Origin: Mobula hypostoma
Lineage: Eukaryota
Direction of reading: 5' to 3'
Assembly (NCBI RefSeq): GCF_963921235.1
Contig: NW_026948255.1
Coordinates: forward strand, 124,001 to 188,000
Length of the DNA stretch: 64,000 nucleotides
Shown: piece by piece, positions 1,693 to 45,606 of the stretch
How positions within the stretch are numbered: position 1 is the first letter of the stretch
Layout of the letters: each line of letters begins with the position of its first letter
Notes under the pieces: generated by a model
Seen by the model: the letters and a program-made list of their open reading frames with translations, nothing else
What the model was told of the DNA's origin: nothing
Databases searched by the model: none
Program-made: the position numbers and the translations under genes

Positions 1693-4600
1693 TTAACATC
1701 TAGACGGACAATCAGTGATCACATTGTCTTTACCCTTAATATGAGTGATCAAAATATTGTACTCCTGTAACATTAAACTCCAATTTAATAATCTTCTATT
1801 TTTGTTTTTCATCTTACTTAAAAACACTAATGGATTGTGATCGGTATGAACTGTGAGTGGTTTATGCGTAGAATAAACATACACTTCAAAATGTTGCAAA
1901 GCTAAAACAAGAGATAACAATTCCTTTTTTTTATTGTTGAACAATTCATTTGATTTGCATTAAATTTCTTAGAAAAGATAAGCTACCGGACGATCAACTT
2001 CATCACCATCATCTTTTTGAAGCAACACTGCTCCTGCAGCTTCATCACTAGCATCTACAGCTAACGAAAATGTTTTTTCAAAGTCAGGAGATTTAAGTAC
2101 AGGTTGACGACATATTATAGCTTTCAATTTATCAAATACCTCCTGACAAAACTCTGCCCAAAGAAACTTCTCATTTTCTTCAAGAGATTAGTTAATGGGA
2201 GAGCAATGTTTGCAAGATCCTTACAAAACGTTCTGTAATATCCCACCATACGCAAGAATCTTCTGAGGGATTTTCTACCAGTGGGAGTGGGCACTTCCAA
2301 AATTGCCTGAACTTTTGCTTGAAAAGGTGCTAATTTTCCCTGCCCGACAACATAACCAAGGTAAGTCACTGTGGCATGCCCAAATTCACTTTTAGATAAG
2401 TTAATAGTTAAGTTAACTTCTGGAAGTCTCTCAAATAATTTCTCCACCGCCGCAATATGTGCTTTCACATATTATTCCCTGTAACCAGATCATCAATATA
2501 GGCATGGGTATCTTTTAATCCCTGAATCACGCTATTAATCATCCCCTGAAAAGTACTTGGTGCATTCTTCATCCCAAACGGAAGAACAAAATATTCGTAT
2601 AACCCAGAGGGGGTTACAAATGCTGAAATCTCTCTGCCTCTATCCGTCAATAGAACACACCAATAACCTTTTAACAAATCAATTTTTGTAAGGAATTTGG
2701 CCTGTTCAACTTTATCCACACAATCTTCTACTCTAGGCATTGGATATGCATCGATCTTTGTCACAGCATTCACTTTTCTGTAATCCATACAAAACCTAAT
2801 ACTATTGTCTGGCTTAGGCACCATAACACACGATGAACTCCAATTCTAATTAAAATGTCGTATAATATTATTTTCTAACATGTACTTAATTTCCTGTTCA
2901 GCAAGTTCACATTTCCCCCTGTTCATTCGATATGGATGTTGTTTTATAGGTTTTGCATCTCCCACATCTACATCATGAGTAGCTACGGTGGTTCTTCTAG
3001 GGACGTCTGGAAATAAATCTCTGTACTTAAAAAAAAAATGACTGTTTCATCTGTTCTCTCTGCTCCGGCTGTAAATGAGCTAATTTTTCATCAATGTTTT
3101 CTAGAAGTTTTGAATTTGGTAACCTGGCTGGAATAATGTTGGGATTAAAATGAGTTTCAGATGAATCCTCCATTAAGTTTTTATCAAGATCAGACTCATT
3201 ATTAATCACAACAGTCATAGTAGCAGCTTCTCTCTCATAATTTGGTTTTATCATATTTATATGACACAGCTGTGTTGCCTTTCTCTGATCTGGGGTTTTT
3301 AGCACGTAATCTACATCATCTACCTTAGATTTAATCTCATAAGGACCATGAAATTTGGCTTGTAATGGGTTCGTTTGCACTGCAAAAAGAAACAACACGT
3401 TATCTTCAGACTTAAATGACCTCATCCTAGCTTCCTTATCATACCAAGTCTTCATCTTCTCTTGAGCCAATTTTAAATTTTCCTTGGCCAAGCTACAAAC
3501 GTTATACAATCTTTCTTTAAATTTTGAAACATAATCTAGCAAATTAGTGTGTACTTATTTATTAATCCACTGTTCCTTCAACAAGGCCAAAGGTCCTCGA
3601 ACTCTATGTCCAAACACGTTCAAAAGGATTAAAACCTAATGATTCCTGTACTGCCTCCCTTACTGCAAAGAGTAGTAAATGTATACCTTCATCCCAGTCC
3701 TTTTCATTTTCCACACAATATGTCCTAATCATAGTTTTTAGTGTAGAATGAAATCTCTCCAAGGCTCCTTGTGATTCTGGAAGACAGGCTGAGGAAATAA
3801 CCTGTTTTACTCCCAGTTTATAAACTACCTGCTGAAACAATCCCGACATAAAATTACTACCTTGATCCGATTGTATTTCCTTACGCAACCCAAAATAAGT
3901 AAATAATTTTATGAGAGCCTTTGTCACAGAGTTGGCTGTTATATCCCTAAGAGGTTCTGCCTGTGGAAACCTAGACGCTGTGCACATAATGGTTAATAAA
4001 TATTGATGTCCAGTTTTAGTTTTTGGCAAAGGACTTACACAGTCTACAAAGATTTTTGAGAACGGCTCACCGAATACTGGAATTGGTTGCAGTTGGGCCA
4101 CTGGAGTAACCTGATTAGGTTTACCCACAATTTGACACGTATGACACGTTCTACAAAATGACACACATATTGTCTTAAACTAGGCCAATAAAAATGTTTA
4201 CAAACTTTGTTCATAGTTTTCTTCACACCTGAATGACCACCCAAAGGAATACTATGAGCCATTGTCTTTAATATCATTTCGGTAAATTTTAGGAACTACT
4301 ACCTAATGAATAACTTCCCATTCCTCACTAGCAGGAATTGTAGGGGATCTCCACTTTCTCATTAATACCTCCTTTTCTAAATAATATCCTACTGGTACTT
4401 TTTTAATTTCACTATCTGGAAGAGCTTGTTCTTTTAATTTAACTATCTCAGGATCTCTACCCTGCTCTGCTATCATTTCCTTTCGCGATAAAGACTAATC
4501 ATCCTGATCAGACTTACCACCAAAATCCTGATCAAATAATGTGGGTAAGAAAGTTTCTGATACATCCTCGAAATTCGAATCTTGATTTGAATGATCATGG

Positions 4601-11274: not shown

Positions 11275-14103
11275 TTATTTACAGAGCTTCCCATTTAGTG
11301 TAAACAGGTACGTCGCCCCATTCTTCAGCTCCTCCCTGAATTTCCTCTGTGTCAGTCCATAGATACACGTGTTGGTGCAGGAACTGAGCAACATCAACAT
11401 ATACCCAGACTCTTGTAGGATAAATGTAGGTGTGTTGTAATATTTGTCAGTGAAAAACACGTTTACCGCTGCCCAGGTCATGGACTGCACAATATTGGTT
11501 ATCCACAATAATACGAAATTAGCAGATAGAGCGAACAACAAAACCATTGACTTTCTGCGGTTCTTAACCTCTGGATCACTTTGGCTGTCAGTATTTCTCC
11601 GAAGTCCACGGCGAACCATATTCGCTGCTATAATATATCTGGTGGTTAAAACATTGAACAGCAGAATTAAACCAAGTGGTAATAATGGGTTCATGATGGT
11701 GTCAAATTACTCGTAACCTCTCCACAGGGATGATGTATAGTACTCGGGTTTTGGAATGCACGTCCCTGGTTGAGCTGCAAAGTAAAATGGAAATGTCTGA
11801 ACACAGCTGCCTATGACCACTGCCACGATCACCACGGTCGCTGTTCTCTCCGGACAATATCGCGTCCGCAGCTTCTGAAGGCAGATCGCGACATAGCGAT
11901 CGAAAGTGAAAGCGACGGTCAGCCAAACGGAACAGTCCATGGCGGCAATAGTCAGAATAGGTCCCACACCACACAGCGGGGGTTTCACCAAAAAATCAGC
12001 ATACAGATAGAGAGCATTGATTTTATCCAATACAACACCAAAGACAACGACCATCAGATCTGCTGCCGCCATGGCCATGAGGTAGCGAGTGATACATTTG
12101 GACAGCCCACAGTTTCTGCGAGACAGGATCACAATTGCCGCTAAATTAACTGAGAAAAGACAGAAAAAAAAAGAAACATTTATTTCTTAATGTGTCTGGA
12201 ATAATCAGTGTGACTTTTGCTTGCAATGGGAAGGCTGGCAGTCCATATCGTGCCGTTTAGATAACAGTCCGCACTATTGTTCGTTTTACCAAAATGCATT
12301 ATCGTACATTTCCCAATACAGTATTCCATCTGTCACCTGTATTTCCATTATTCCAATATGTCTAAGTCCTGCTGCAATCGCATTGCTTCCTCAGCACAAC
12401 CTACCCCTCCACCTGTCTTTGTATCATCAGCAAATTTTGCCACAAAACCTTCAGTTAAATAATGGTAATCCTTGATGGTAGGAAGAAGGAAACCATGGCG
12501 CAAATTTGTTTCTTGGATGGCAAGTCAGCTAATAGTGATTTGTTCAGTGATCTTTGCTGGGCCAATTGTTGTGTGTCATATATGTCGAAGATTTGGATAA
12601 CAAAGTGCAAGACCCGGGGAATAAATTTACAGACAACAATATATGCCTAGTGGAGAGCGAGATCAGCTATCAAAAAGTAGATTGTTATCTTCATCAGTTC
12701 CGTAAGTTGGTCAAAGAATGGAATGGTAGAGTTTAATTAGGACACATGGAGGGTTATTTTTTCTGAAGGTTAAGCAAGGTAGGAGTTTCTCAGCGAACAC
12801 TGGGGCTCCGTGGAGTCTTTAGTATAGAGGGATCTTGTATTTCAAGAACTTGGTTCACTGGAAGTGGAATATAAGGTAGACAGGGTGGTTATGAAGCTCG
12901 GATCGATAGGTTTCATCAGTGACGGAACTGAGTAGAAAAGTTTGGATGGAGATGCAAATGCGCACGTCTCTGTTACGCTTGTTTCCCAGAACTGTGAGTG
13001 TTCTGGACGCCTTGTAGTAGGAAAGGCTCACACTGAATTAATCCAGAAACAATTTACCAGAATGTTTCCAGGATTTTAGAAACTGATATGCAGAGAGAGA
13101 TTGATCAGATCCGGACCATATTCGCTGCAGCACAGGTAGATGGGAGTTAATCACACAGAAGCACAGAAAACCACCAGGGTCAGAGACAGCATGAATTCCC
13201 CCAGTCTATTTTTTTACAGGGTTCAGGAATCCTGATCCTGACAGCGCGGGTATAAATTGAGTTGGAAAGGTTCAATAGGTATCTGAGGGGTAACATTTAA
13301 CCAAATGGGGCAATTAGGTGAAATATGCTGCGCGATGATGTGGCTGCGGCAGGCCCAATAATAAAAGGCAGTTGGACGGGCAAACGGTTATGAAGCGTTT
13401 GTAAGGTTGGGAGGCGAACGCTGAAACATTGTGCAGCATCTTATTTGGCATGGAATCTTTGGATCAGATATCTCTTTTCCGTGCTGCATAACTCTATCCC
13501 TCCAAAATAAATTATTATTCTTATTAATCCTAAATTCAGGGTATTTCCATAGAATACTTTTCCCTCTGGGTTGTTTTTACTTTTCCCCTGTATCCCCGAT
13601 GACCCTTCAGATAACAAACTCCAGTAGCTTGATAACCAAGGCAGCACATACCCTTTGGCTGAATACATAGGACAGCCACCATAACTATTCCAGGCAGAGG
13701 ACATCATGAATCAAACGCAATCACTTTGCATTAGAGTCTGAACCAGACTCAGGTTTATTATCAGCGGCAAATGTCGTGAGGGTCATTACAACCGAAACAT
13801 AAACGTGTAAGGTTATGATAAAGTACATTAAAGCAAACAAGAATAAAACAATAAAGGCGTCAAAGTCACGTAAATCATATTTTAAACAAATCCATGAAAC
13901 GCGCTTCTATTTTCATTATTTCCTTATTATGAGTTTATACTAAAAGACGCGAATAGCAACGTCCGCTCTAAATTGCAGCGCATAATTTAAAGACTACAGC
14001 ATGTCACACATCTCGGCATTTCCACGACCTTACCTGGAATAGCAACGGCTGCCAGTATGGGATAGTAAATAGAGACAATATAATAAATTGCTGAATATCC
14101 CAT
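11275..14103 (-). pseudogene. gpr139-like: GPR139/GPR142-like class A GPCR, probable pseudogene (exon 1 14034-14103, exon 2 11275-12149, in-frame TAA at 11707-11709)
   Basis: Exon 1 encodes MGYSAIYYIVSIYYPILAAVAIP and is followed by GTAAG. A pyrimidine-rich CAG acceptor sits at 12150-12152. Exon 2 reads VNLAAIVILSRRNCGLSKC...MAAADL...FDRYVAIC...SSCTNTCIY...FREELK. ORFs 11707-12132 and 11275-11694 are in the same frame, separated by one stop. Confidence 0.88.
12450..13460 (+). mobile_element. Degraded CR1 LINE 3' half inside the GPCR intron
   Basis: Remnants of LGxLL, xDD and FxRMxPG coding sequence and a CR1-like 3' UTR. Confidence 0.6.
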
Positions 14104-14144
14104 TTTCTGCCAGTAGCGGCGATCAGTCGTACGAAATGTGCCAA

Positions 14145-14231
14145 CTGTCCAGAAGCGCTGGTTCAATGAGCTCTTATACACCAGGAGCAATGTCCCTTTA
14201 GTTGCATTAGTTACAGGAGAGTGAACAAACA
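14145..14231 (-). promoter_or_regulatory. Core promoter of the minus-strand GPCR: bipartite element, TATA-like box and downstream motif
   Basis: Minus strand: TGTTTGTTCA-ctctc-CTGTAACTAA (14231-14207), GTGTATAA (14181-14174), CAGCGCTTCTGGACAG (14160-14145). All three motifs are shared with the paralog promoter. Confidence 0.7.
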
Positions 14232-14369
14232 ACCACTGTTTGTTTTGGTCTATTTGTACTCATTGTGACAATGGGTAACACAATTAACTCTTCGCGGGGA
14301 ACGACGAACAATGGATTCGATGTTCATTCAATGTAATTTAGAGGAGTCAGGGAAATAGTGTACCACAGC

Positions 14370-17300
14370 AAAAAAAAAAACTGGACCCATCAAATTCGTG
14401 TCAAATTCTGCCTGGACTTCCATACCGTTACATTCACGTACTTACCCAAATTTGTCTTAAATGTTACATCAAACCCATGTCCACCACTTTCGCTGGCAGC
14501 TAGTTGCACACTCTCCCCACTCTTAGAATAGAGCTTCCCATCAGTTTTCCCTTAAACATTTCACTTTTCACCCTTAACCTATAAACAATAGTTTTACTCT
14601 CACCCAAACAGTGACGAAAGCCTGCTTTTCTATACCCCTCATAATTTGTATGCCTCTCTGTAATCTCCCCACATTCTCCTACGCTCAAAATAACCTATTC
14701 AACCATTCCCTGTAAATCAGGTCTCCAAGTTTCGACCAAGACCTTCTAAACTTTCTCTGTATTTGTTCACTCTCAGTGATTTATTTGTGCAGGTAGTTGA
14801 TTAGAACTCCACACAATACTCCAAATTGATCCTCACCAAGGTACAGAGCAATTTCAGAATTACATCCTCAACTGAACAGTCTGATTTATCAATGCCTAAC
14901 TGCCCAAAATCTGCTTTACGACCCAATCTACCTACGGCGCCACCATCAATGAATAATGGATCTGTGTTCACAGTCCCTTTTGTTCCACTGCACAACTTAG
15001 TGCCGTACTATTCCATGTTTACGTCCTCCGCTGGTCAGTCCTCCCAGTGTGAAACATCCCACACGTCTGCACTAACAACAGAGCCAGCAGTGATCAGTGC
15101 AGTACTCAACTACTTTGAGGCCTCCATTCAGAGCAGCAACCATATAACTTCACTCTCTGGCTTCTACCGTAGTCATGTTGAATCCGGTTCACTACATCCC
15201 ACTGACAGAAAGGGACTGAACCGTTTGGACTAACCTCCCATGTGTGGTTTGTCAAAAGCCTTGTTAATGTCCAAGTCAACGAGATCCATTGACACGTCTT
15301 AGACCATAAGATCATAAGACAAAGGTGCAGAAGTCGGCCTTTCGGCCCATCGAGTCTCCTCCGTCATTTTATCATGAGATGATCCATTCTCCCATTTAGC
15401 CCCACTCTCCCGCCTCCTCTCCATAACCTTTGAAGCCCTGGCTACTCAGATACCTATCAATCTTTGCCTTAAATACACCCAATGATTTGGCCTCCACTGC
15501 CGCTGGTGGCAACAAATTCCACAGATTCACCACCCTCTGGCTAAAAGAAAACTTCGCATCGCTGTTCTGAATGGGCACCCTTCAATCCTTAAGAAATGCC
15601 CTCTCGTACACTCCCACACCATGGGAAACAACTTTGTCACATCCACTCTGTCCATGCCTTTCAACATTCGAAATGTTTCTATGAGGTCTCCCCTCATTCT
15701 TCTAAACTCCAAGGAATACAGTCCAAGAGCGTTCCTCAAACGTTCCTTATATGTTAACCCTATCATTCCCGGAATCATTCTAGTGAATCTTCTCTGAACC
15801 CACTCCAACGTCAGTGCAACCTTTCTTAAATAAGGAGCCCAAAACTGCACACAGTACTCCAAGTGAGGTCTTACCAGTGTCTTATAGAGCATTAGCATCA
15901 CATCCTTGATCCTATACTCTATTCCTCTAGAAATGAATGCCAACATTTTATTCGCCTTCTTCACCACCGACTCAACCTGGAGGTTAACCTTAAATGTATC
16001 CTGCACGTGGACTCCCAAGTCCCGTTGCATCTCAGAATTTTGAATTCTCTCCCCATTTAAATAATAGTCTGCCTGTTTATTTCTTCTAGCAGAGTGCATA
16101 ACCATACACTTTCCAACATTGTACTTCATTTGCCACTTCTTTTCTTATTCTCCCAATCTATCCAAGTCTCTCTGCAGACTCTCTGTTTTCTCAGCACCAC
16201 CGGCCCCTCCACCAGTCGTTGTATCATCAGAAAACTTAGCCACAAAGCCATCGATTCCATAATCCAAATTGTTGATGTATAACGGAAAAAGAAGCGGCCC
16301 CAACACGGACCCCTGCGGAACACCACTGGTAACCGGCAGCCAACTAGAATGGGATCCCTTTATTCCCACTCTCTGTTTCCTGCCAATCAGCCAATGCTCT
16401 ATCCACGTATGTAACTTTCCCGTAATTCCATGGGCTCTTATCTTGTTAAGCAGCCTCATGTGTGGCACCTTGTCAAAGGCCTTCTCAAAATCCAATACAC
16501 AACATCTACTGCATTCCCCTTGTCTAGCCGACTTGTAATTTTGTCAGATAGGATTTTTCTTTAAGGAAACCATGCTGAGTTCTGCCTATCTTGCCATATG
16601 CCTCCAGGTCCTCCGTAACCTCATCCTTGACAATTGAATCCAACAACTTCTCAACCACCGATGTCAAGCTAATAGGACTATAATTTCCTTTTTGCTTCCT
16701 TGCCCCCTTCTTAAATAGCGGAGTGACATTTGCAATCTTCCAGTCCTCCGGAACCATGCCAGAATCTATTGACTTTTGAAAGATCATTGCTAATGCCTCC
16801 GCACTCTCCACAGCTACTTCCTTCAGAATACGAGGTTGCATTCCATCTGGTCCAGGAGATTTATCGACCTTTAGACTATTCAGCTTCCTGAGTACTTTCT
16901 CTGTCGTAATTGTGACTGCGCACACTATTCATTCCTTGGGCCCTTAAGTGTCCGGTGTACTGCTGATGTCTTCCTCAGTGAAGACTGAGGCAAAATACGC
17001 GTTCAATTCCTCCGCCATCTCCTTATCCCCTATTACAATTTCTCCAGCATCATTTTCTATCGGTCCTATATCTACTCTCACCTGTCTTTTACTCTTTATA
17101 TATTTGAAGACGCTTTCAGTATCCTCTTTGATATTATTTGCTAGCTTCCTTTCATAGTTCATCTTTTCTATCTTAATGTCCTTTTTAGTTTATTTTTGTA
17201 AGCTTTTTAAAACTTCCCAATCCTCTGTCCTCCCACTAATTTTTTGCTTCCTTTTATGGCCCCTCCTTTGCTTTAACTTTGGCTTTGATTTCCCTTGTCA

Positions 17301-17720
17301 GCCACGGTTGCATCCTTATTCCATTCGAAAATGTCTTCTTTTTTGGAATATATCTTTATCAATTTTCTGGCTAACTCCTAGAAAAAGAGTTTGTAAGATT
17401 GGTTAGACACTCCGTAACACCCACAACAATAATTCCTTGTCTATCGAAATCCCGAACATTTATATGCTGTCCCTTCGAGTACCTTGAAATAATTAACCCA
17501 CTGCAGGCGTCAGACTCACTGGTCTATAATTTCCCGACATAATCCAAGCCCTTTCCGAGCAGAAACAATGACAATACCTGTTCTCCAGTCACCTGGCCTC
17601 TTAACCGTGATTAAGGATATTTTAAACATTTCAGCGGATACCCCAAAAATTAATTCACTTTCCTCTCGCAAGATTCGCGTGGACAACTTTTCAAGGAACT
17701 GGAAATTAGCCACCATAATT
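14370..17720 (-). mobile_element. Older CR1 (14370-15300 and ~17430-17720) interrupted by a younger CR1
   Basis: Degraded 3' end and LEYCV, KAFDK and NYRPVSLT remnants lie on both sides of the younger insertion. Confidence 0.6.
15302..17390 (-). mobile_element. CR1 LINE, 5'-truncated ORF2 (RT)
   Basis: ORFs with [47 protein letters not shown] and RPHLEYCVQFW. 3' tail of 8-bp repeats (ACCATAAG on +) at 15303-15320. Confidence 0.92.
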
Positions 17721-17739
17721 TGACTGATTACAGATTTAT

Positions 17740-18918
17740 CGGTCTATTTGTCTATATATCTGCCTATTTCTCTTTTTATTNNNNNNNNNNNNNNNNNNNN
17801 NNNNNNNNNNNNNNNNNNNNNNNNNNNNNNNNNNNNNNNNNNNNNNNNNNNNNNNNNNNNNNNNNNNNNNNNNNNNNNNNNNNNNNNNNNNNNNNNNNNN
17901 NNNNNNNNNNNNNNNNNNNNNNNNNNNNNNNNNNNNNNNNNNNNNNNNNNNNNNNNNNNNNNNNNNNNNNNNNNNNNNNNNNNNNNNNNNNNNNNNNNNN
18001 NNNNNNNNNNNNNNNNNNNNNNNNNNNNNNNNNNNNNNNNNNNNNNNNNNNNNNNNNNNNNNNNNNNNNNNNNNNNNNNNNNNNNNNNNNNNNNNNNNNN
18101 NNNNNNNNNNNNNNNNNNNNNNNNNNNCTGACTACCTAATTCCCCTTCAGGATTTCTGCGGGAGCAACATCATGACAGGTTTTAAAACTGCTGATTTCCC
18201 TCTTGTGTTCTCTTGAATGTTGTATACTCCTCNNNNNNNNNNNNNNNNNNNNNNNNNNNNNNNNNNNNNNNNNNNNNNNNNNNNNNNNNNNNNNNNNNNN
18301 NNNNNNNNNNNNNNNNNNNNNNNNNNNNNNNNNNNNNNNNNNNNNNNNNNNNNNNNNNNNNNNNNNNNNNNNNNNNNNNNNNNNNNNNNNNNNNNNNNNN
18401 NNNNNNNNNNNNNNTCTGACTACCTAATTCCCCTTCAGGATTTCTGCGGGAGCAACATCATGACAGGTTTTAAAACTGCTGATTTCCCTCTTGTGTTCTC
18501 TTGAATGTTGTATACTCCTCCCGTTTGTTATACATCTATCAATCTATCTGTCTATCTATCTATCTATCTATCTATCCATCCATCCATCCATCTATCTATT
18601 TTACTATCTATCTATCTGTCTATATATATGCCTATTTCTCTTTTTATTTATCTGNNNNNNNNNNNNNNNNNNNNNNNNNNNNNNNNNNNNNNNNNNNNNN
18701 NNNNNNNNNNNNNNNNNNNNNNNNNNNNNNNNNNNNNNNNNNNNNNNNNNNNNNNNNNNNNNNNNNNNNNNNNNNNNNNNNNNNNNNNNNNNNNNNNNTC
18801 TGACTACCTAATTCCCCTTCAGGATTTCTGCTGGAGCAACATCATGACAGGTTTTAAAACTGCTGATTTCCCTCTTGTGTTCTCTTGAATGTTGTATACT
18901 CCTCCCGTTTGTTATACA
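17740..18918. repeat. Tandem repeat: three near-identical ~105-bp units separated by (TCTA)n-type tracts and N runs
   Basis: The unit CTGACTACCTAATTCCCCTTCAGG...GTATACTCCTC starts at 18128, 18416 and 18800. TCTA/TCCA repeats are visible at 18535-18654. Confidence 0.9.
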
Positions 18919-19089
18919 GCCCCGTCTGCCTAACCAAAGTAAATATACCCCTTGAAACGGAAAGTACCGTAACAATGGTGGCCGTTTGAGGTTCTGGTGA
19001 CGTCATCGTCCAGAATCCACAGCTCCTTTGGAAAAATGCATCTTTTGCCCTGTTAATCCATCAAATATAAGGTCTTTCGAAAAGATCTT

Positions 19090-19385
19090 TCACAACGGAA
19101 GAAATATCGGGATTTATACTGTTCCCGAAGGAGCGGAGGAGTTGTTGATGATGGAGTTTGTAGAAAAGTTGCCGCGGAAAGCGCTGGAGATTTCCTCGAC
19201 TATGGAGACTGAGATTGAGAGGGCGCATCGTGCGCTCGTCCCGAGGCTTCCCCAGGACGGAGAAAGTAAGTCGCGGTCCATGCTACTTAGATTCCTTCGA
19301 TTCAAGAGAAAGGCGGAGATTCTGCGAAGGGCCTGGGGTAGGTAGAGGGCGTTTTGGAAAGAGAATTTAATACATTTCGATCAAG
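19090..19385 (+). mobile_element. L1-type LINE ORF1 fragment (RRM region)
   Basis: NIGIYTVPEGAE...EFVEKL...EIERAHRAL...RSMLLRFLRFKRKAEILRRAW matches the L1 ORF1 (Transposase_22) pattern. Confidence 0.75.
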
Positions 19386-19669
19386 ATTAGTCCCCTTAAC
19401 CTGCTGATTTATTTTGAGTCCATAAAAGTGAATTACCCGCAATCCAATGTGCTTATCGGATTTTTTTTTACATTCCACCTGCACCACATTCATCAGTTCC
19501 CAATTTCCATCTGTTTATCCATTTCCGAACCCACGCGGACTCTGGCAATGCTGTTGTTGCTGTCCATCCAGTCCTGTGGGTAGGGATGTTGTGTCTAGGT
19601 CTGTGTGTTTCCCTGCAGGATCCTGTGTACAGAATACAATGGAAAGATTGACTGTTTGTGGTTCAGTGT

Positions 19670-19934
19670 AACAGTTCTATTGGAAATCTGTGTCTGCATC
19701 TCGGGCTTAGTGTGGGACTGAATGTCTCTGCTGTCTGAGAAGGTGGAACTAAAGAGCGGCTGGTCTCTTGGTGCTCTGTAACGCACCTTGTGTGTTCTGT
19801 ACCTTGTCCCTGGACAGGAGTGAATAACGGATTTGAATGAAGCCTTTCCCTGTGGGTAGGAGAGGAAATAGGGTGAGTGAAGGACAGGGAAACGTTAGAC
19901 GGCTGTGTGAAGCGGCCGGTGCAGCCACTGTTAG

Positions 19935-19981
<47 letters not shown>

Positions 19982-21560
19982 CACATAACACAGCACACAG
20001 ACACGCACACACACAAACAGATCTAACGTTGTCATTCACTTCCAGCCATCCTATATGTATTTATATCCAGGTTAGAGTAGATTGTTTTATCACTTAACCT
20101 GTCTGTCCATTCCATTGAAGTCTAAAACATTTCATCTCAATTTTCGTTTGAACTCTGGCAGATTTGAGACGTTCATCAAATTCTATGACATCAGCAACAT
20201 CAGAAACTGCTGGAGGAACTCGGAAGAGATTTTCAGCACAGTTTGTCTGTTGACTTGCAATTCCAGCATCTGCACATTTTTAGTGTCTGTACACCAGCAA
20301 CCGGTTTTATATCGTGACTAACACGTCCTTGTTCTGTCCATTGTATTTCTGTCCGTAGCTGTGTTTCCGTGTTGTGTCTGTGTGTCTCCGAGTGAGTCTG
20401 TGTGTGTGTGTCTGTGAAGGAGTTGAAGCAATGAAGGACAGTTCATACTGGGAAACCGCAGGGCAGATGTTGGAATCGGTCGGACTGTGTTGGCGATCTC
20501 CGTTTACAGATGTGTAATTAGCCAACAGAAACCTGAAATCTGTAAATGCGGCTGGTACGTGACAAAGCTCATTGGAAATGTATGTCTGGGTTTGGGCTCA
20601 TTACGGGACTGACTGTCTCTGCTGTCTGAGTCTGCGGAAATGGTGACCTGCCAGTATCGCTGTGCTCTGTATCACACCCTGTGTGTGACAGAAGCGGCTA
20701 CTCTGTCCCTTGGGCCTCACGGGAGGGAATATCGGAGTTGAAGGAAATCTTTGTCTGTGTGTAGGAGGAGGAAACTGGGTTAGTAGGGGAGAGGTAAATG
20801 TCAGACGGTTGTGCGAAACCAGTGCNNNNNNNNNNNNNNNNNNNNNNNNNNNNNNNNNNNNNNNNNNNNNNNNNNNNNNNNNNNNNNNNNNNNNNNNNNN
20901 NNNNNNNNNNNNNNNNNNNNNNNNNNNNNNNNNNNNNNNNNNNNNNNNNNNNNNNNNNNNNNNNNNNNNNNNNNNNNNNNNNNNNNCTTGTCATTCACTA
21001 TCAGCCATGCTGCATCTGTTCATCTCCCAACTGAGAGGACTATTTGTCTTATTTAAGCTGTCAGTCCATTCTTTTGCAGATGAAACATTTTTGGTTCAAT
21101 TTTCATTTGGCTTCTGTCTGATTTCAGACGCCCATAGTAGTCTATTACATCAGTAGCATCACAAAAGGCCGGAGGAGTTCAGTAATGTGNNNNNNNNNNN
21201 NNNNNNNNNNNNNNNNNNNNNNNNNNNNNNNNNNNNNNNNNNNNNNNNNNNNNNNNNNNNNNNNNNNNNNNNNNNNNNNNNNNNNNNNNNNNNNNNNNNN
21301 NNNNNNNNNNNNNNNNNNNNNNNNNNNNNNNNNNNNNNNNNNNNNNNNNNNNNNNNNNNNNNNNNNNNNNNNNNNNNNNNNNNNNNNNNNNNNNNNNNNN
21401 NNNNNNNNNNNNNNNNNNNNNNNNTGGAGGGGAGATGTTGGAGCAATTGGAAATTGAAGTTCTAAATGGGAAACCGCAGAGCAGCAGTTTGCGTTCGATG
21501 GTTCGCCAAATATAAACGTGAAATCTGTAACTGCAGCTACTCCGTGACAAAGCTCAGTCT
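19670..21560. repeat. Old tandem duplication (two ~0.9-1.0 kb units) upstream of the intact GPCR
   Basis: Collinear matches: GGGACTGAxTGTCTCTGCTGTCTGAG (~19714 and ~20605), TTGTCATTCACT (~20029 and ~20988), GGGAAACCGCAG (~20450 and ~21468). Microsatellites or N runs sit at equivalent positions. Confidence 0.75.
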
Positions 21561-21686
21561 TTGACATTAGAATTTAGACATGATTCCACCAGACGAGTCA
21601 TTGCTGAGGTAATGCTCAGGAATTTTGATATGTTTGTCTTGAATCGGCCGAATACTTACATCAGAGACAATAGTGTTGAATTAAAG

Positions 21687-21805
21687 TGTTTGTTCAAGTA
21701 ACTGTAACTAAGAAAGTTAGTCAGGGGTATATCCGTATCTCTGGAGACCGATCCAGTGTATAAATCAGGGCCGTTTAGAATGCATCAGCTCAGCGTTTCT
21801 GCCAG
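21687..21805 (+). promoter_or_regulatory. Core promoter of the plus-strand GPCR: bipartite element, TATA box and downstream motif
   Basis: TGTTTGTTCA-agtaa-CTGTAACTAA (21687-21711), GTGTATAAA (21756-21764), CAGCGTTTCTGCCAG (21791-21805); ATG at 21850. Confidence 0.72.
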
Positions 21806-21849
21806 AGCTGTGAATTCGGGAGTAACATACGTCGCAGGTTCTCACTGAA

Positions 21850-23388
21850 ATGGTGAATACTGTCATCTTCCGAATAGAAGAAGTTTACTATCCTTTAATT
21901 TCAGTCTTTGGAATTCCCGGTAAGCCACAGAGGCAGCTTCCGTTGGTCAGAACTGAACTTCAATTCCAATGTTGTTATTATTTCTGTCGCTCTCAGGGGC
22001 ACTTCGAGAACAATTCTGAGAAGACTTTAACTGTTTTTCCACATATTCTGTTTTGCCTGGATGGGTGTTTCCGCGCATTCCATGTTTCTGTTCCGTCCTT
22101 CGGTGTCCTGTCGCTGACAGGGAGAACCATGGAAGTTTATGATTGTCTAATGGAACAATCCCTCTATCACCGTCCGGATTTATTCATTGCAACTAGATGA
22201 GACGGCGAAGGCGTCGGTAGAAAATATTTAATTCACTATCGATTCCGAGGAGGGTATACACAGTTACAGATTTTCGCTCTCACTTTTTATTCCGGTAATC
22301 AGTAAGAAATCGGGATTCAGATCATATTGACTTTAGTTTACCGACCAAACTCGTTTTTCTACGCCGCGTGTGCACGCCAGCTAAATGCAACAGAAAAGTG
22401 GAAATAGTACAGGACCCCCTCAAACCGTTGCATTGACTTTTGCTCAGGAATTTCTCAATTTGCCGTTCCCTCTCTCTCTCTTCCAGCGAACTTGGTGGCG
22501 GTTATGATCCTGTCCCGGGGAAAATGTGGTCTCTCCAAATGTGTCACTCGCTACCTGGTGGGAATGGCAGCGGCCGATCTCCTGGTCGTTATCTCGGATC
22601 CACTGCTGAGGTGGACTGCAGAGATTTATTTTCCCCGATCATTCTTGTTCATCACTCCCGTGTGCAGACTCCGTCAGTGGCTGATTTTTGCGAGCACTGC
22701 GACCTCCATCTGGCTGACTGTCGCTTTCACCGTCGATCGATTTGTAGCGATTTGCTGTCAGAAGATGAAAACAAAATATTGTACCGAGAGAACGGCGGCT
22801 GTGATTATGGGGACAGTGAGTGCGCTGGCCTGTTTGGAGACTGTCCCCTGGTACTTTGCATATGAGCGTAGAGAAATAATTGATGGTGTTCCCTGGTTTT
22901 GTGTTCTCTCATCGAGCTACAAAATCTCTCTATCATGGGCGGCATTTGAGATGTTTCACCGTATTTTAACCCCCTGTGTCGCTTTCTTTCTGATTTTGCT
23001 GTTCAATATTCAGACTGTCAGGAGGATTCTGGCAGCCAGTCGAGCCCGCAGGGGGCTCCGGGGACAAAAGAGTGGAGAGAATGACAAGGACCGGGAGATG
23101 GAGAGCAGACATAAATCCATCGTTTTGCTCTTCAGCGTAACCGCTAGTTTCATACTGTTGTGGGTAACACAGGTGGTATTTTATATCTACCAACGGATTT
23201 CAAAGAGTTTTATTTATTCTGCCACTGACCCCCGTTACATCACAGTAAAGACAGCAGGAATGCTGCAAGTTCTGAGTTCCTGCACCAACACGTGTATTTA
23301 CGCCCTGACTCAGAGCAAATTCCGAGAGGAACTCAAGAATGCGTTGAAATATCCATTGAATCGGATTTTGAAATTCATGAAACGTTAG
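21850..23388 (+). CDS. gpr139-like: GPR139/GPR142-like class A GPCR, intact, two coding exons (21850-21919, 22487-23388), 323 aa
   Basis: Exon 1 encodes MVNTVIFRIEEVYYPLISVFGIP, donor GTAAG at 21920, acceptor TTCCAG ending 22486, phase-1 join gives P-A-N-L-V. Seven hydrophobic segments with MAAADL, VDRFVAIC, TM3/ECL2 cysteines, SSCTNTCIY and helix 8 FREELK. AATAAA at 23390-23395. Confidence 0.92.
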
Positions 23389-34554: not shown

Positions 34555-36050
34555 GCCCTGGCAGAAATATTTAAAATGTCGCTGTCTATGGGTGAAGTGC
34601 CGGAGGATTGGAGAGTGGCTCATGTTGTTCCGTTGTTTAAAAAAGGATCGAAAAGTAATCCGGGAAATTATAGGCCGGTGAGTTTAACGTCAGTAGTAGG
34701 TAAGTTATTGGGGAGTACTAAGAGACAGAATCTACAAGCATTTGGAAGAGGGGCTTATTAGGGAGAGTCAACATGGCTTTGTGCGTGGTAGGTCATGTTT
34801 GACCAATCTGTTGGAGTTTTTCGAGGAGGTTACCAGGAGAGTGGATGAAGGGAAGGCAGTGGATATTGTCAACATGGACTTCAGTAAGGCCTTTGACAAG
34901 GTCCCGCATGGGAGGTTAGTTAGGAAAATTCAGTCGCTAGATATACATGGAGAGGTGGTAAATTGGATTAGACATTGGCTCGATGGAAGAAGCCAGAGAG
35001 TGGTGGTAGAGAATTGCTACTCTGAGTGGAGGCCTGTGACTAGTGGTGTGCCACAGGGATCAGTGCTGGGTCCATTGTTACTTGTCATCTATATCAATGA
35101 TCTGGATGATAATGTGGTAAATTGGATCAGCAACTTTGCTGATGATACAAAGATTGGAGGTGCAGAAGACAGTGAGGAAGGTTTTCAGAGCCTGCAGAGG
35201 GATTTGGACCAGCTGGAAAAATGGGCTGAAAAATGGCAGATGGAGTTTAATACAGACAAGTGTGAGGTATTGCACGTTGGAAGGACAAACCAACGTAGAA
35301 CATACAGGGTTAATGGTAAGGCACTGAGGAGTGCAGTGGAACAGAGGGATCTGGGAATACAGATACAAAATTCCGTATGAGTGTCGTCACAGGTAGATAG
35401 GGTCGTAAACAGAGCTTTTGGTACATTGGCCTTTATTAATCAAAGTGTTGAGTATAAGAGCTGGAATGTTATGATGAGGTTGTATAAGGCATTGGTGAGG
35501 CCGAATCTGGAGTATTGTGTTCAGTTTTGGTCACCAAATTACAGGAAGGGTATAAATAAGGTTGAAAGAGTGCAGAGAAGGTTTACAAGGATGTTGCCGG
35601 GACTTGAGAAACTCAGTTACAGAGAAAGGTTGAATAGGTTAGGACTTTATTCCCTGGAGCGTAGAAGAATGAGGGGAGATTTGATAGAGGTATGTAAAAT
35701 TATGATGGATATAGATAGAGTGAATGCAAGCAGGCTTTTTCCACTGAGGCAAAGGGAGAAAAAAAAACAGAGGACATGGGTTAAGGGTGAGGGGGGAAAA
35801 GTTTAAAGGGAACATTAGTGGGGGCTTCTTCACACAGAGAGTGGTGGGAGTTTGGAATGAGCTGCCAGACGAGGTGGTAAATGCGGGTTCTTTTTTAACA
35901 TTTAAGAATAAATTGGACAGATACATGGATGGGAGGTGTATGGAGGGATATGGTCCGTGTGCAGGTCGGTGGGACTAGGCAGAAAATGGTTCGGCACAAC
36001 CAAGAAGGGCCAAAGGGCCTGTTTCTGTGCTGTAGTTTCTATGGTTCTAT
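34555..36050 (+). mobile_element. CR1 LINE, 5'-truncated, young
   Basis: ORFs 34576-35978 cover DWRVAHVVPLFKKG through RPNLEYCVQFW and the C-terminus; tail TTTCTATGGTTCTAT. Confidence 0.93.
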
Positions 36051-43900: not shown

Positions 43901-45545
43901 GATCATAATGCATACTTTCTAAACCAGGCAGCATCCTGGTAAATCTCCTCTGTACCCTTTCCAATGCTTCCACATCCTTCCTATAGTGAGGTGACCAGAA
44001 CTGGACACAATACTCCAAGTGTGGCCTAACCAGAGTTTTATAGAGCTGCATCATTACATCGCGACTCTTAAACTCTATCCCTCGACTTATGAAAGCTAAC
44101 ACCCCATAAGCTTTCTTAACTACCCTATCCACCTGTGAGGCAACTTTCAGGGATCTGTGGACATGTACTCCGAGATCCCTCTGCTTCTCCACACTACCAA
44201 GTATCCTGCCAGTTACTTTGTACTCTGCCTTGGAGTTTGTCCTTCCAAAGTGTACCACCTCACACTTCTCCGGGTTGAACTCCATCTGCCACTTCTCAGC
44301 CCACTTCTGCATCTTAGCAATGTGGCCAGACATTTCCTGTTTCTCAGCTCCACCCATAAGGACTCAGTAGATAAACCTTCTGATCTGTCCTGCCTGAGCA
44401 CTGCTGTAACATTTTCCCTGACAAGCAGTGCTACACCCCCGCCCCCGAACCTTTCATTCTCTGCCTCGATCACATCTGAAACTTCGGAACACTGGAATAT
44501 TAAGCTGCCAGTCCTGCCCCTCCTGTAGCCAAGTTTCACTAATTGCTATAACGTCATAATTCCACGTGTTAATCCACGCCCTCAGCTCGTCTGCCTTCCC
44601 CGCGATACTACTAGCATTGAAATATATACAACTTCAGAAGATTTTTACCACCACTCACAACATTTCGATTTGCCGCTTTGCTTGAACTTTTAACATAATT
44701 TATTTTCACCCCAGCCACACTGTCAGCTCTGGCACTCTGGTTCCCATCCCCCTGCAAATATAGTTTAAAGCCTCCCCAACAGCACTAACAATCCTCCTGG
44801 AAAGGATATTGGTCCTCTTGTAGTTCAAGTGTAACCCGTCTCTCTTGTACAGGTCCCACCTGCCCCAGAAGAGGTCCCAATGATCCTGAAATCCGAAACC
44901 CTGTTCCCTACACTAATTCCTCAGCCACTTGTTCATCCTCCAGAGCATCCTATTCCTACCCTCACTGGCACGTAGCACAGGTAGCAATCCTGAGATTACT
45001 ACCCTCGAGATCCTGCTTTTCAACTTCCTCCCAAGCTCTCTATACTCACTGTCCAGGACCTCCTCACTTTTCCTTGCTATGTAATTGGTACCGATGTGCA
45101 CCACGACATCTGGCTGATCACCCTCCCACTTCAGAATGTCATGCAAGCGATCAGAGACATCCTTGACCCTAGCACCCGGGAGGCAACAAACCATCCTAGA
45201 TTCTCTGTCACGACCACAGAACCTCCTGTCTGTACCTCTAACTATAGAGTCCCCTATCACTACCGCTCTCCTCTTTTTCCACCCTCCCTTCTGCACCGCA
45301 GAACCAGATTCAGTGCCAGAGATCTGGCTGCTGCAGCTTGCCCCAGGTAAGTCTTCCCCCCACCCCCCCCAACAGTATCCAATGCGGTATACTTGTTGTT
45401 GAGGGGAATGGCCACAGGGGAACCCTACTCTGCCTGCCCTTTCCTCTTCCCTCACCTGACAGTGACCCAATTTCCTGTGCTCTGCTCCTTTGGCGTAACT
45501 ACCTCCCTGTAGCTACTATCTATAATCTCCTCAATCTCCCAAATG
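40913..45545 (-). mobile_element. Near-full-length CR1 LINE (ORF1 esterase, ORF2 endonuclease-RT) with a nested CR1
   Basis: ORF1 AVVIGDSIVRG...PGARVKDV...VVVHIGTN (SGNH esterase, 44913-45470); endonuclease GDFN and SDHN; RT 41093-43310; tail AAACATAGAAAA. Confidence 0.93.
43493..44318 (-). mobile_element. CR1 3' fragment inserted into the endonuclease region of another CR1
   Basis: Has its own AGAACATAG tail and is flanked by AATGT at 43488-43492 and 44319-44323. The host sequence rejoins when it is removed. Confidence 0.88.
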
Positions 45546-45606
45546 ATCTGCTACCAGTTTTCTGAATAAATTATGAAAGAAAATAAAACAATGATGCTGA
45601 GTGGTT

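What the first reader, a model, noticed from the sequence alone, without database searches (positions are those of the whole stretch)
11275..23388. Head-to-head GPR139-like pair with features of an expanded receptor repertoire, possibly chemosensory
Seen: two divergently transcribed paralogs 7.7 kb apart with identical architecture (70-nt exon 1, phase-1 intron in TM1, very short N-terminus). Cytoplasmic-side motifs are conserved (CGLSKCxTRYL, WLTVAFTxDR, YCxERTA, SSCTNTCIY, FREELKN). The outer halves of TM2, TM3, TM6 and TM7 and the extracellular loops are almost wholly different, and one copy is disabled. Established: mammals have single GPR139 and GPR142 genes activated by aromatic amino acids (L-Trp, L-Phe), and cartilaginous fishes have few classical olfactory receptors. 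Inference: clustered birth-and-death paralogs with variable pockets could form an uncharacterised amino-acid or peptide sensing system, either sensory or immune.
Basis: partly seen in the sequence, partly recalled or inferred. Interest (0 to 1): 0.75.

Follow-up and report, generated by a model that had tools for sequence, protein, structure and literature searches.

The report
Ray orphan-receptor gene pair, expanded family
Two back-to-back receptor genes in a devil ray, one working and one just broken by a single stop codon, belong to a very large receptor family found only in sharks and rays, whose ligand pocket varies greatly while its signalling side and promoter stay fixed; this is the pattern of a sensing repertoire, but where the genes are expressed is still unknown.

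Summary
The window holds two divergently oriented two-exon class A GPCR genes, with the same 70-nt exon 1 and the same phase-1 intron just before N1.50.

- **Plus gene (21850-23388):** intact, 323 aa.
- **Minus gene (14103-11275):** one in-frame TAA at 11709-11707, yet it keeps all 71 family-conserved residues, both splice sites and its promoter.
- **Gaps:** the five N runs lie in the spacer, not in either gene.

The genes are not GPR139 orthologues (45 bits, about 25% identity to human GPR139). They belong to an elasmobranch-only expansion: 2101 clusters at 90% identity and about 110 at 50%. The tree places this family as sister to a single-copy amphibian and sturgeon gene, though an AU test does not exclude one alternative.

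Findings I did not see in the earlier notes of this scan:

- Pocket positions are nearly invariant in the single-copy sister gene but the most variable part of the expanded family.
- In two recent skate paralogue pairs, 30% of amino-acid changes fall in 10% of codons.
- A fixed promoter module (TGTTTGTT, then TATA, then ATG) marks all seven family gene starts that I could inspect.

Expression could not be tested, and the GPR139 amino-acid-binding residues are not conserved. This scan has already reported the family on other DNA of the same genome (25 notes). I found no paper describing it.

The parts
21687..21711 (+). Plus gene: conserved upstream promoter element TGTTTGTTCA-N5-CTGTAACTAA (forkhead-like core), 163 nt before the ATG
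   Evidence: The exact 25-nt pattern occurs only twice in the window, 0.01 expected by chance. The same module at the same spacing is present in skate genes L002, L005, L007 and L008.
21757..21763 (+). Plus gene: TATA box TGTATAA, 93 nt before the ATG
   Evidence: The TGTATA core is invariant in the three-gene alignment A2.
21850..21919 (+). Plus gene exon 1 coding part (70 nt, 23 codons plus 1 base; N-terminus and first half of TM1)
   Evidence: ATG, then GT donor GTAAGC; the spliced frame is open.
21920..22486 (+). Plus gene intron (567 nt, phase 1)
   Evidence: GT...AG with a polypyrimidine tract. DNA contigs of public runs cross it unspliced.
22487..23388 (+). Plus gene exon 2 (rest of TM1 to the stop); intact 323-aa receptor
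   Evidence: Open frame. 7tm_1 at 5.8e-21. 94-95% identical to a Mobula hypostoma protein, P0001.
14207..14231 (-). Minus gene: the same upstream promoter element, 128 nt before the ATG
   Evidence: Same spacing class as skate gene L004, its nearest relative with DNA.
14174..14180 (-). Minus gene: TATA box TGTATAA, 77 nt before the ATG
14034..14103 (-). Minus gene exon 1 coding part (70 nt)
   Evidence: ATG, then donor GTAAGG.
12150..14033 (-). Minus gene intron (1,884 nt, phase 1), holding a reverse-transcriptase-like LINE fragment
   Evidence: Acceptor TTTTCTCAG. RT-like reading around 12280-12460 (judged from the sequence).
11275..12149 (-). Minus gene exon 2; same frame throughout but interrupted once
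   Evidence: 7tm_1 at 2.5e-12 on the first piece. Keeps 71 of 71 family-conserved columns.
11707..11709 (-). Premature TAA in the minus gene, at the top of TM5 (position 5.43)
   Evidence: It is the only defect found.
14232..21686 (.). Intergenic spacer: LINE remnant (RVT_1 at 16145-16495, minus strand), direct repeat units of about 0.9-1 kb, microsatellites and five N runs. No shared bidirectional promoter.
   Evidence: N runs are at 17781-18127, 18233-18414, 18655-18798, 20826-20986 and 21190-21424.

Best explanation
[quoted passage not shown] One is intact. The other was disabled very recently by one stop codon.

**Origin.** The family arose from a single ancestral jawed-vertebrate gene. 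The survivor of that gene in bony vertebrates is most likely a single-copy orphan found in amphibians and sturgeon. The whole group belongs to the wider GPR139/GPR142-related clan. The clan shares a phase-1 intron one codon before N1.50 and lacks Pro7.50.

**Likely mechanism.** Each gene has its own short TATA promoter with a fixed forkhead-like upstream element. Each encodes a receptor with almost no N-terminus, so ligand recognition must lie in the transmembrane pocket and extracellular loops. These are exactly the parts that differ between copies. The DRF/DRY motif, ICL2, the cytoplasmic end of TM6, NTxIY and helix 8 are held constant, so all copies presumably feed one signalling pathway.

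**Reading.** This is a ligand-diversified receptor repertoire that gains and loses genes. Its most likely use is as chemical sensors in a dedicated cell type.

**Shown:** gene structures, family size and taxonomic range, the pocket/cytoplasmic contrast, the reversed constraint relative to the single-copy relative, and the promoter module.

**Inferred:** G-protein coupling, one shared cell type, and chemosensory use.

**My odds:**
- A real, functional, ligand-diversified repertoire: about 0.85.
- Chemosensory in the broad sense (nose, mouth, gill, skin or solitary chemosensory cells): about 0.45.
- The confidence figure of 0.55 is for the statement as a whole.
For: **Structure and family**
- Gene models and splice sites.
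- 7tm_1 domain.
- AlphaFold model of a 68%-identical family member (P0034): pLDDT 92.9, pTM 0.88, seven helices, an ECL2 hairpin and helix 8.
- 2101 clusters at E<=1e-10, nearly all from elasmobranchs.
- 111 representatives at 50% identity with E<=1e-30, then a score gap.
- The most divergent members are all sharks, rays or skates.

**Origin**
- In the tree the family is monophyletic (95/80) and sister (98/90) to the amphibian and sturgeon single-copy gene.
- The same intron site and phase occur in four skate genes, the Xenopus sister gene and a teleost gene of the P0240 group.

**Diversification**
- Entropy at 31 canonical pocket positions against inner transmembrane positions:
  - whole family: 2.33 vs 1.22 bits
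  - recent Mobula paralogues: 1.07 vs 0.35
  - amphibian orthologues: 0.12 vs 0.52
  - P0240-group orthologues: 0.65 vs 0.93
- In two independent recent skate pairs, 30% of nonsynonymous changes fall in these 10% of codons (p 3e-6), while synonymous changes do not (p 0.40).
- One pair has outer-half dN/dS of 1.62 against 0.36 for the inner half.

**Promoter**
- The exact 25-nt element occurs twice in the window, once before each gene, with 0.01 expected.
- A composite pattern (TGTTTGTT, TGTATA[AT], ATG plus a 70-nt exon plus GT) hits exactly seven places in 224 kb on both strands. All seven are family gene starts, with spacing fixed within each subfamily.

**Recent loss of the minus copy**
- 0 departures at 71 conserved columns.
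- Its branch is no longer than those of its sisters.
Against: - No expression evidence of any kind. No RNA run holds the locus. The four small holder runs are unspliced DNA. A Logan contig that looked like a transcript is unspliced genomic DNA.
- The catshark sensory atlas reports no GPCR among the 50 most specific genes of its 'brain & olfactory epithelium' library (PMC11979771). This is weak evidence, because receptor genes are lowly expressed.
- A variable outer half with a conserved inner half is common to many GPCR paralogue sets.
- dN/dS exceeds 1 in only one of four recent pairs. In another pair synonymous changes are also concentrated in pocket codons, so patchy gene conversion may contribute.
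- The N:S contrast between pocket and the rest is marginal (Fisher p 0.06).
- The AU test does not reject grouping the family with the P0240 group instead of the amphibian gene (p 0.12).
- True GPR139 and GPR142 sequences could not be put in the tree.
- The factor that binds the promoter element is unknown.
Confidence: 0.55

Rival explanations
1. The repertoire serves internal or mucosal and immune signalling rather than external chemosensation. In this reading, diversified receptors on leukocytes, epithelial cells or somatosensory neurons detect host or microbial peptides and metabolites, in the manner of formyl-peptide, chemokine or MRGPR expansions.
For: - The predicted fold, with an ECL2 beta-hairpin, resembles peptide and chemoattractant receptors such as C3aR, C5aR, SSTR, opioid, CCK and FPR as closely as it resembles GPR139.
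- Catshark ORs, TAARs and ORAs are reported to be expressed mainly outside the nose (PMC11979771). Receptor families in sharks therefore do not always follow their bony-vertebrate roles.
- Pocket diversification fits an arms race equally well.
Against: - As far as I know, no vertebrate class A family used mainly in immunity reaches roughly a hundred or more genes per genome (general knowledge).
- No expression data point to either reading.
Confidence: 0.2
2. The family is a set of neuronal neuropeptide or metabolite receptors like GPR139 itself, acting in the brain. The expansion would reflect many diverged endogenous ligands.
For: - GPR139 is the nearest named protein by sequence and by fold.
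- The clan shares the intron site and the lack of Pro7.50.
Against: - The single-copy relatives keep their pockets almost invariant, whereas the expanded family does the reverse.
- GPR139 agonist determinants are not kept.
- Frequent pseudogenes and dN/dS of 0.34-0.85 are atypical for endocrine or neuropeptide receptors (earlier notes of this scan).
- No matching ligand gene expansion is known.
Confidence: 0.1
3. Most copies are evolutionary by-products. Duplication in transposon-rich DNA would spread a gene whose copies drift under relaxed constraint, and the pocket variability would be mostly neutral.
For: - The window is dense in LINE and LTR elements, with a LINE remnant between the genes and another inside the minus intron.
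- One of the two copies here is dead.
- dN/dS is fairly high.
- In one pair synonymous changes also cluster in the pocket.
Against: - Seventy-one columns stay at least 85% conserved across sharks, rays and skates.
- Inner-half dN/dS is 0.29-0.65, and below 0.5 in four of the five pairs.
- The promoter module, the 70-nt exon and the splice sites are kept across two ray orders and two subfamilies.
- Nonsynonymous but not synonymous changes are enriched threefold in pocket codons.
Confidence: 0.1
4. The genes are lineage-specific copies of GPR139 or GPR142 proper and sense aromatic amino acids. This is the starting point of the reader's inference.
For: - Databases name them 'probable GPR139'.
- GPR139 is the top Swiss-Prot and PDB sequence match.
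- The plus copy keeps F at 3x33.
Against: - Only 45 bits and about 25% identity to human GPR139, barely above bradykinin and neuromedin receptors.
- Closer relatives exist that are themselves not GPR139.
- H5x43, R6x51 and N7x38 are replaced, and those positions are hypervariable in the family.
Confidence: 0.03

Closest known systems
GPR139 (human; structures 7VUG/7VUH/7VUI/7VUJ, 9M42)
   Same: - It is the nearest named protein by sequence (E 9e-11) and by fold among Swiss-Prot entries (23-24% identity).
- Both are class A receptors with DRY-type motifs, W6.48 and N-x-x-x-Y without Pro7.50.
- The residues around the intron site look alike (GLP-A-N in GPR139 as I recall it, GIP-A-N here), but the intron in GPR139 itself was not checked.
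   Different: - Only about 25% identical.
- The extracellular N-terminus is much shorter: about 4-8 residues here.
- The family lacks Pro6.50, which GPR139 has.
- The agonist determinants H5x43, R6x51 and N7x38 are not kept.
- GPR139 is single-copy and highly conserved (PMC12208981). This family has dozens to hundreds of copies per genome.
Single-copy orphan of amphibians and sturgeon (P0226 group, annotated 'probable GPR139')
   Same: - The closest relative outside elasmobranchs: 32% identity, E 8e-33.
- Sister to the family in the tree, with support 98/90.
- Same phase-1 intron at the same codon (73-nt against 70-nt exon 1).
- Very short N-terminus and no Pro7.50.
   Different: - One copy per genome, 66-74% identical across frogs, salamanders and caecilians.
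- Its pocket is nearly invariant (0.12 bits) where the family's is hypervariable.
- It keeps Pro6.50 and an invariant K6.51 (HWLPK).
- The promoter module was not found within 260 nt upstream of its annotated ATG.
Conserved single-copy orphan of sharks, ray-finned fishes, coelacanth, amphibians and reptiles (P0240 group). It probably corresponds to the 'GPR210' subtypes of PMC6504862, but I could not verify that mapping.
   Same: - Belongs to the GPR139/142-related clan.
- Same intron site and phase.
- No Pro7.50.
   Different: - Sharks have their own orthologue of it (P0276, 66% identical to the coelacanth protein), so the expanded family is a separate lineage.
- It carries ERF, no W6.48 and R6.51.
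Vertebrate chemosensory class A repertoires (OR, TAAR, ORA/V1R, T2R) and the MRGPR and FPR expansions
   Same: - Large lineage-specific gene families that gain and lose copies and carry pseudogenes.
- Hypervariable pocket with a conserved signalling face.
- Shared proximal promoter logic within the family.
- Short N-terminus, with ligand binding in the transmembrane bundle.
- This is a resemblance in how the family works.
   Different: - No sequence membership in any of these families.
- The coding region is split by an intron in TM1, whereas OR, TAAR, V1R and T2R coding regions are usually single-exon (general knowledge).
- The promoter element is not the O/E plus homeodomain pair of OR genes (general knowledge).
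- Expression in sensory cells has not been shown.

Membership tests
Rhodopsin-like (class A) GPCR | Seven-transmembrane fold matching Pfam 7tm_1, with a DRY-type motif, D2.50, N1.50 and the C3.25-ECL2 disulfide cysteines | tested here: met
   - 7tm_1 at 5.8e-21 over the full profile.
- AlphaFold model with seven helices plus helix 8, pLDDT 92.9.
- N25, D54, DRF, C83 and C162 are present and near-invariant in the family.
Rhodopsin-like (class A) GPCR | CWxP (Pro6.50) and NPxxY (Pro7.50) micro-switch prolines | tested here: not met
   W6.48 is kept, but 6.50 is T in both copies and variable in the family. TM7 reads NTCIY. This is atypical but not disqualifying, since GPR139 also lacks Pro7.50.
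GPR139 orthologue | High sequence identity to GPR139 across vertebrates (a highly conserved gene) | tested here: not met
   - 45 bits and about 25% identity to human GPR139.
- Closer non-GPR139 relatives exist.
- Conservation of true GPR139 is taken from PMC12208981.
GPR139 orthologue | Agonist-site residues F3x33, H5x43, W6x48, R6x51 and N7x38 (PMC5430874) | tested here: not met
   The plus gene has F, E, W, Q, G and the minus gene has I, E, W, N, Y. Family entropy is 3.1-3.4 bits at four of the five positions.
GPR139 orthologue | Placement inside the GPR139 clade in a tree that includes true GPR139 and GPR142 | not testable with these tools
   No true GPR139 or GPR142 sequence could be brought in by reference.
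GPR139/GPR142-related clan (including the P0226 and P0240 groups) | Phase-1 intron splitting the codon before N1.50 in TM1, after a [FY]YP...G[IM]P motif | tested here: met
   Found in both window genes, skate genes L002, L004, L005 and L007, the Xenopus gene L006 and the teleost gene L009. Not checked in GPR139 or GPR142 themselves.
GPR139/GPR142-related clan (including the P0226 and P0240 groups) | N-x-x-x-Y in TM7 without Pro7.50 | tested here: met
   NTCIY in the family, N[MV]CIY in the P0226 group, NMYLY in the P0240 group and NFFLY in human GPR139.
Chemosensory receptor repertoire (a functional class) | Large lineage-specific family that gains and loses genes and carries pseudogenes | tested here: met
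   One of the two copies here is disabled. Earlier notes of this scan report further broken copies.
Chemosensory receptor repertoire (a functional class) | Diversifying evolution focused on ligand-contact positions | tested here: inconclusive
   - Pocket entropy is highest in the family and lowest in the single-copy relatives.
- Nonsynonymous changes are enriched threefold in the pocket (p 3e-6), and one pair has omega above 1 there.
- Other pairs do not, and the pooled N:S contrast gives p 0.06.
- No site-model test was possible.
Chemosensory receptor repertoire (a functional class) | Expression in sensory cells, sparse or one receptor per cell | not testable with these tools
   No RNA run holds the locus; the holder runs are DNA. 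No paper in the library reports expression.

The most novel reading that the evidence does not exclude
Sharks and rays are known for tiny OR, TAAR and ORA repertoires. The most novel reading is that they built their own large chemosensory receptor family from a single ancestral orphan GPCR of the GPR139-related clan. In this reading the family is driven in a dedicated sensory cell type by a fixed TATA promoter with a forkhead-like upstream element. That would make it a fifth major vertebrate chemoreceptor family, specific to elasmobranchs.
Probability: 0.35. Interest if true: 0.9.

Novelty: new variant of a known kind. Interest (0 to 1): 0.62.

Why it matters
Cartilaginous fishes are famous for their sense of smell, yet they carry only a handful of OR, TAAR and ORA genes and about 35 V2Rs (PMC11979771; PMC10116579). 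A class A receptor family with dozens to hundreds of copies, confined to elasmobranchs, could fill that gap. The family has a hypervariable pocket, a fixed signalling face and a shared promoter. Alternatively it could reveal a different ligand-diverse system, for instance mucosal, immune or somatosensory.

- **A natural control.** The single-copy relative in amphibians and sturgeon has a frozen pocket, which makes it an entry point for finding the ligand.
- **A handle on regulation.** The 25-nt promoter element and its fixed spacing can be used to find the regulator and the cell type.
- **Correct gene models.** The true gene start is a 70-nt exon that public annotations often miss or replace with transposon-derived or intron-derived sequence (P0001, P0030, P0113). 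Repertoire counts and expression quantification therefore need corrected models.

Tried and rejected
- **Expression.**
  - The look-up of sequencing runs (rna) returned no RNA holder (the first try failed as busy).
  - The four small runs laid on the plus gene are low-depth DNA contigs that cross the intron-exon boundary unspliced. That used the only read-laying run, so the TAA of the minus copy could not be checked against reads.
  - The 1,071-nt Logan contig of P0030 looked like a possible transcript, but its N-terminus is read-through of the acceptor region, so it is genomic.
- **DNA of close relatives.** No orthologue dN/dS for the window genes was possible, and dN/dS was done on skate relatives instead.
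- **The minus copy as a query.** It could not be searched full-length, because references through a stop are not accepted and the pieces are too short for the length filter. Its relatives were found by local BLAST against fetched proteins instead.
- **True GPR139 and GPR142.** P0258, a candidate, turned out not to be GPR139. No true GPR139 or GPR142 sequence could be brought into the tree.
- **Shared bidirectional promoter.** Rejected. Each gene has its own TATA module, and the spacer is transposon and repeat DNA.
- **Third copy in the window.** None found by tblastn.
- **Fold searches.** They do not discriminate among peptide-type class A receptors.
- **Literature.** Six searches found no description of the family. 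The supplements of the catshark atlas are not held.
- **Earlier findings.** Searching them for the promoter motif gave nothing usable.
- **AU test.** It did not reject the alternative sister group (p 0.12), so the origin claim is stated as favoured, not proven.
- **The repeat finder family D1.** It is an artefact of N runs matching each other.

Full report
**1. What is in the sequence**

The region holds two class A GPCR genes in head-to-head orientation.

The plus gene has a 70-nt first coding exon (21850-21919, donor GTAAGC), a 567-nt intron and a second exon (22487-23388, acceptor TTCCAG). Together they give an open 323-codon frame.

The minus gene has the same build:
- Exon 1 lies at 14103-14034 (donor GTAAGG), followed by a 1,884-nt intron that contains a LINE reverse-transcriptase fragment.
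- Exon 2 lies at 12149-11275. The gene is 314 codons in a single frame.
- One TAA at 11709-11707 interrupts it.

Both introns are phase 1 and split the codon just before N1.50.

Pfam 7tm_1 matches at 5.8e-21. tblastn finds no third copy in the 64 kb.

**2. The gaps**

All five N runs named in the finding lie in the intergenic spacer (17781-21424). None touches an exon, intron or promoter. The nearest gap ends 263 nt before the plus promoter element.

The 7,746-nt ATG-to-ATG distance includes 1,069 N and is therefore an estimate.

Around the last two gaps, the order of three repeat blocks is the same as in the preceding ungapped repeat unit, with similar spacing. This argues for continuity there. 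The gaps appear to replace microsatellites such as the (TC)n and (ATCT)n runs seen nearby. Continuity across the first three gaps cannot be tested here.

**3. The family**

The plus exon 2 finds 2101 protein clusters (90% identity level) at E<=1e-10. Nearly all are annotated 'probable G-protein coupled receptor 139'. They come from Mobula, Hemitrygon, Hypanus, Narcine, skates, Heptranchias, Heterodontus, Pristiophorus, Rhincodon, Scyliorhinus, Carcharodon and others. Sixteen distinct Mobula hypostoma proteins are at least 74% identical to the plus gene alone.

Against 1.84 billion representatives at 50% identity, there are 111 hits at E<=1e-30. Full-length members reach down to 39% identity, and then there is a gap. 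Ten of the most divergent representatives, plus those nearest the minus copy, are all from elasmobranchs.

The minus copy belongs to another subfamily. Its nearest relatives are P0128 from M. hypostoma (58%) and P0169 from Rhinoraja (57%).

I did not verify the species.

**4. Relation to GPR139**

Human GPR139 is the best solved-structure match by sequence, but at only 45 bits (E 9e-11, about 25% identity). That is barely above bradykinin, neuromedin and GPR15 receptors. It is also the top Swiss-Prot fold match, at 23-24% identity, with GPR142 at rank 8.

Just below the family in the representative search come two other groups:
- A single-copy gene of salamanders, frogs and caecilians, whose members are 66-74% identical to each other, plus a sturgeon copy at 46% (P0226 group).
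- A broadly conserved single-copy orphan present in sharks (P0276), sturgeon, teleosts, coelacanth, amphibians and reptiles (P0240 group).

Neither group is GPR139: they score 53 and 70 bits to 7VUG. A published survey had already noted extra GPR139/142-like orphans in coelacanth, gar and fishes and named them GPR210A and GPR210B (PMC6504862). I could not map these names onto my groups.

A maximum-likelihood tree (77 rows, LG+C20) gives these results:
- The elasmobranch family is monophyletic (95/80).
- It is sister to the amphibian and sturgeon gene (98/90).
- The P0240 group is separate (100/99).

An AU test does not reject the alternative grouping of the family with the P0240 group (p 0.12), so the sister relation is favoured but not proven.

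Gene structure supports common descent of the whole clan:
- Exon 1 is exactly 70 nt and phase 1 in the skate genes L002, L004, L005 and L007.
- It is 73 nt and phase 1, at the same junction (P / A / S), in the Xenopus sister gene.
- It is 79 nt and phase 1, at the same junction (GIP / S / N), in a teleost gene of the P0240 group.

All groups, and GPR139, lack Pro7.50.

**5. Where the copies differ**

An AlphaFold model of the full-length family member P0034 (68% identical to the plus gene) is confident, with pLDDT 92.9 and pTM 0.88. It fixes the helix boundaries.

On that topology, the pair is 26% identical in the extracellular halves and loops and 59% identical on the cytoplasmic side (p 1.8e-9). 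Family-wide entropy is 2.41 against 1.35 bits (p 1.6e-21).

Such a contrast is common among GPCR paralogues, so I compared it with orthologue sets. The table gives entropy at 31 canonical pocket positions and at inner transmembrane positions.

| Set | Pocket (bits) | Inner TM (bits) |
|---|---|---|
| Whole family | 2.33 | 1.22 |
| Recent Mobula paralogues | 1.07 | 0.35 |
| Amphibian orthologues of the sister gene | 0.12 | 0.52 |
| P0240 group | 0.65 | 0.93 |

So the pocket is the best-conserved part of the single-copy relatives and the least conserved part of the expanded family.

**6. Codon evidence**

DNA of five skate genes was.

Nei-Gojobori dN/dS over exon 2 is 0.34-0.85 for four recent pairs.
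- **P0113/P0115 (dS 0.063):** the outer half has omega 1.62 against 0.36 for the inner half. The 31 pocket codons carry 10.8 nonsynonymous and 0.2 synonymous differences (Fisher p 0.023 against the rest).
- **P0053/P0054:** omega is alike in both halves, and synonymous differences are also concentrated in pocket codons. This hints at patchy gene conversion.

Pooling these two independent pairs gives the following:
- 30% of nonsynonymous differences fall in 10% of codons (p 3e-6).
- Synonymous differences do not (13%, p 0.40).
- The N:S contrast is marginal (p 0.06).

This argues against uniform purifying selection. It is not a formal demonstration of positive selection.

**7. The promoter**

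The two window genes are only 45% identical as proteins, yet they share an exact bipartite element, TGTTTGTTCA-N5-CTGTAACTAA. It lies at 21687-21711 (+) and 14207-14231 (-). These are the only two matches in the window, even when up to 3 mismatches are allowed, with 0.01 expected by chance. Each element is followed by a TATA box (TGTATAA), 93 and 77 nt before the respective ATG.

A composite pattern (TGTTTGTT, TGTATA[AT], ATG plus a 70-nt exon plus GT) hits exactly seven places in 224 kb searched on both strands. All seven are family gene starts. The spacings fall into two classes:
- Element to ATG 160-163 nt and TATA to ATG 91-93 nt, in the plus gene and the four skate genes nearer to it in sequence.
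- Element to ATG 128-138 nt and TATA to ATG 77 nt, in the minus gene and its skate relative.

The TGTTTGTT core looks like a forkhead-type site. That comes from my own knowledge; binding is untested. The module was not found in the 260 nt before the annotated ATG of the Xenopus gene.

I tested this independently and give the element and its spacing.

**8. The disabled copy**

The minus gene keeps its promoter, its exon 1, both splice sites and all 71 columns that are at least 85% conserved in the family. Intact members depart at a median of 4 such columns, and the plus gene at 6. Its branch is no longer than those of its sisters. The stop sits at position 5.43, at the top of TM5.

It is therefore a very recent loss, a segregating null allele or an assembly error. 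I could not check it against reads.

**9. Function**

The receptor has almost no N-terminus, a conserved C3.25-ECL2 cysteine pair, an ECL2 hairpin, DRF/DRY, W6.48, NTxIY and a conserved helix 8. Ligand binding in the transmembrane pocket and loops, with signalling through a common G-protein interface, is the natural inference.

The GPR139 agonist residues (PMC5430874) are not kept. The plus gene has F, E, W, Q, G and the minus gene has I, E, W, N, Y at 3x33, 5x43, 6x48, 6x51 and 7x38. Nothing therefore points to aromatic amino acids.

No expression evidence could be obtained. No paper in the searchable library describes the family. The catshark sensory atlas considered only the four classical olfactory families, and it reports no GPCR among the top 50 genes of its 'brain & olfactory epithelium' library.

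**10. Verdict**

- A large, elasmobranch-only, pocket-diversifying orphan receptor family is real.
- The label 'GPR139-like' is only loosely right.
- The amino-acid idea is unsupported.
- Sensory versus immune use is open.

This scan has already reported the family on other pieces of the same genome (25 notes), so this pair adds two members rather than a discovery.
- the single-copy sister gene with a frozen pocket;
- the shared intron site across the clan;
- the explicit promoter module;
- the first codon-level evidence.

Noticed in passing
window 3027-4164 (-), 54485-56963 (+), 34742-35806 (+), 41093-46335 (-), 58316-59452 (-), 63488-63991 (+): The window is dense in transposon coding remnants. 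There is an integrase (rve) at 3604-4164, RVT_1 hits at 54485-55039 and 41997-43310, and several LINE-type reverse-transcriptase C-terminal fragments that repeat the same 'LEYCVQFWSP...RVQRRFTRM' reading. No other host gene was evident among ORFs of 130 aa or more.
   Followed up: partly
window 19703-21556: The spacer holds direct repeat units of about 0.9-1 kb. The block pairs are 19703/20594, 20029/20988 and 20524/21509. Two of the N runs sit where the previous unit has a (TC)n microsatellite and its flank. The last unit ends about 130 nt before the plus gene's promoter element.
   Followed up: partly
P0001, P0030, P0113, P0115 (relatives); L002 2967-3036, L008 9894-9963: Public gene models of relatives often miss the true 70-nt first exon. 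P0001 starts in a reverse-transcriptase-like peptide. P0030, P0113 and P0115 read through the intron's acceptor region. The real exon 1 and its promoter lie upstream in L002 and L008. Repertoire counts and expression estimates based on current annotation will be affected.
   Followed up: partly
window 22494-23361, run X4 (organism B): Short contigs of a DNA run from another organism pile up on conserved parts of exon 2. Their summed depth is 40-260, against 3-9 at the edges of the gene, and they are mostly 90-95% alike. This is the look of many collapsed paralogues in that genome.
   Followed up: no
L003 1-2940 (Leucoraja erinacea): No exon 1 or promoter module was found in the 2.9 kb between the contig start and exon 2 of P0081. 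The first exon may lie beyond the contig end, or this copy may lack it.
   Followed up: no
L005 and L007 (Rhinoraja longicauda, same chromosome, about 190 kb apart): In the paralogue pair P0053/P0054, synonymous differences are also concentrated in pocket codons (dS 0.32 against 0.13 overall). This suggests patchy gene conversion that homogenises the rest of the gene while sparing the pocket-coding stretches.
   Followed up: no
P0240-group orthologues (alignment): The conserved single-copy P0240-group orphan has ERF instead of DRY and lacks W6.48 (LS[VI]TR), while keeping R6.51 as in GPR139. This is an unusual micro-switch set for a receptor conserved from sharks to reptiles.
   Followed up: no
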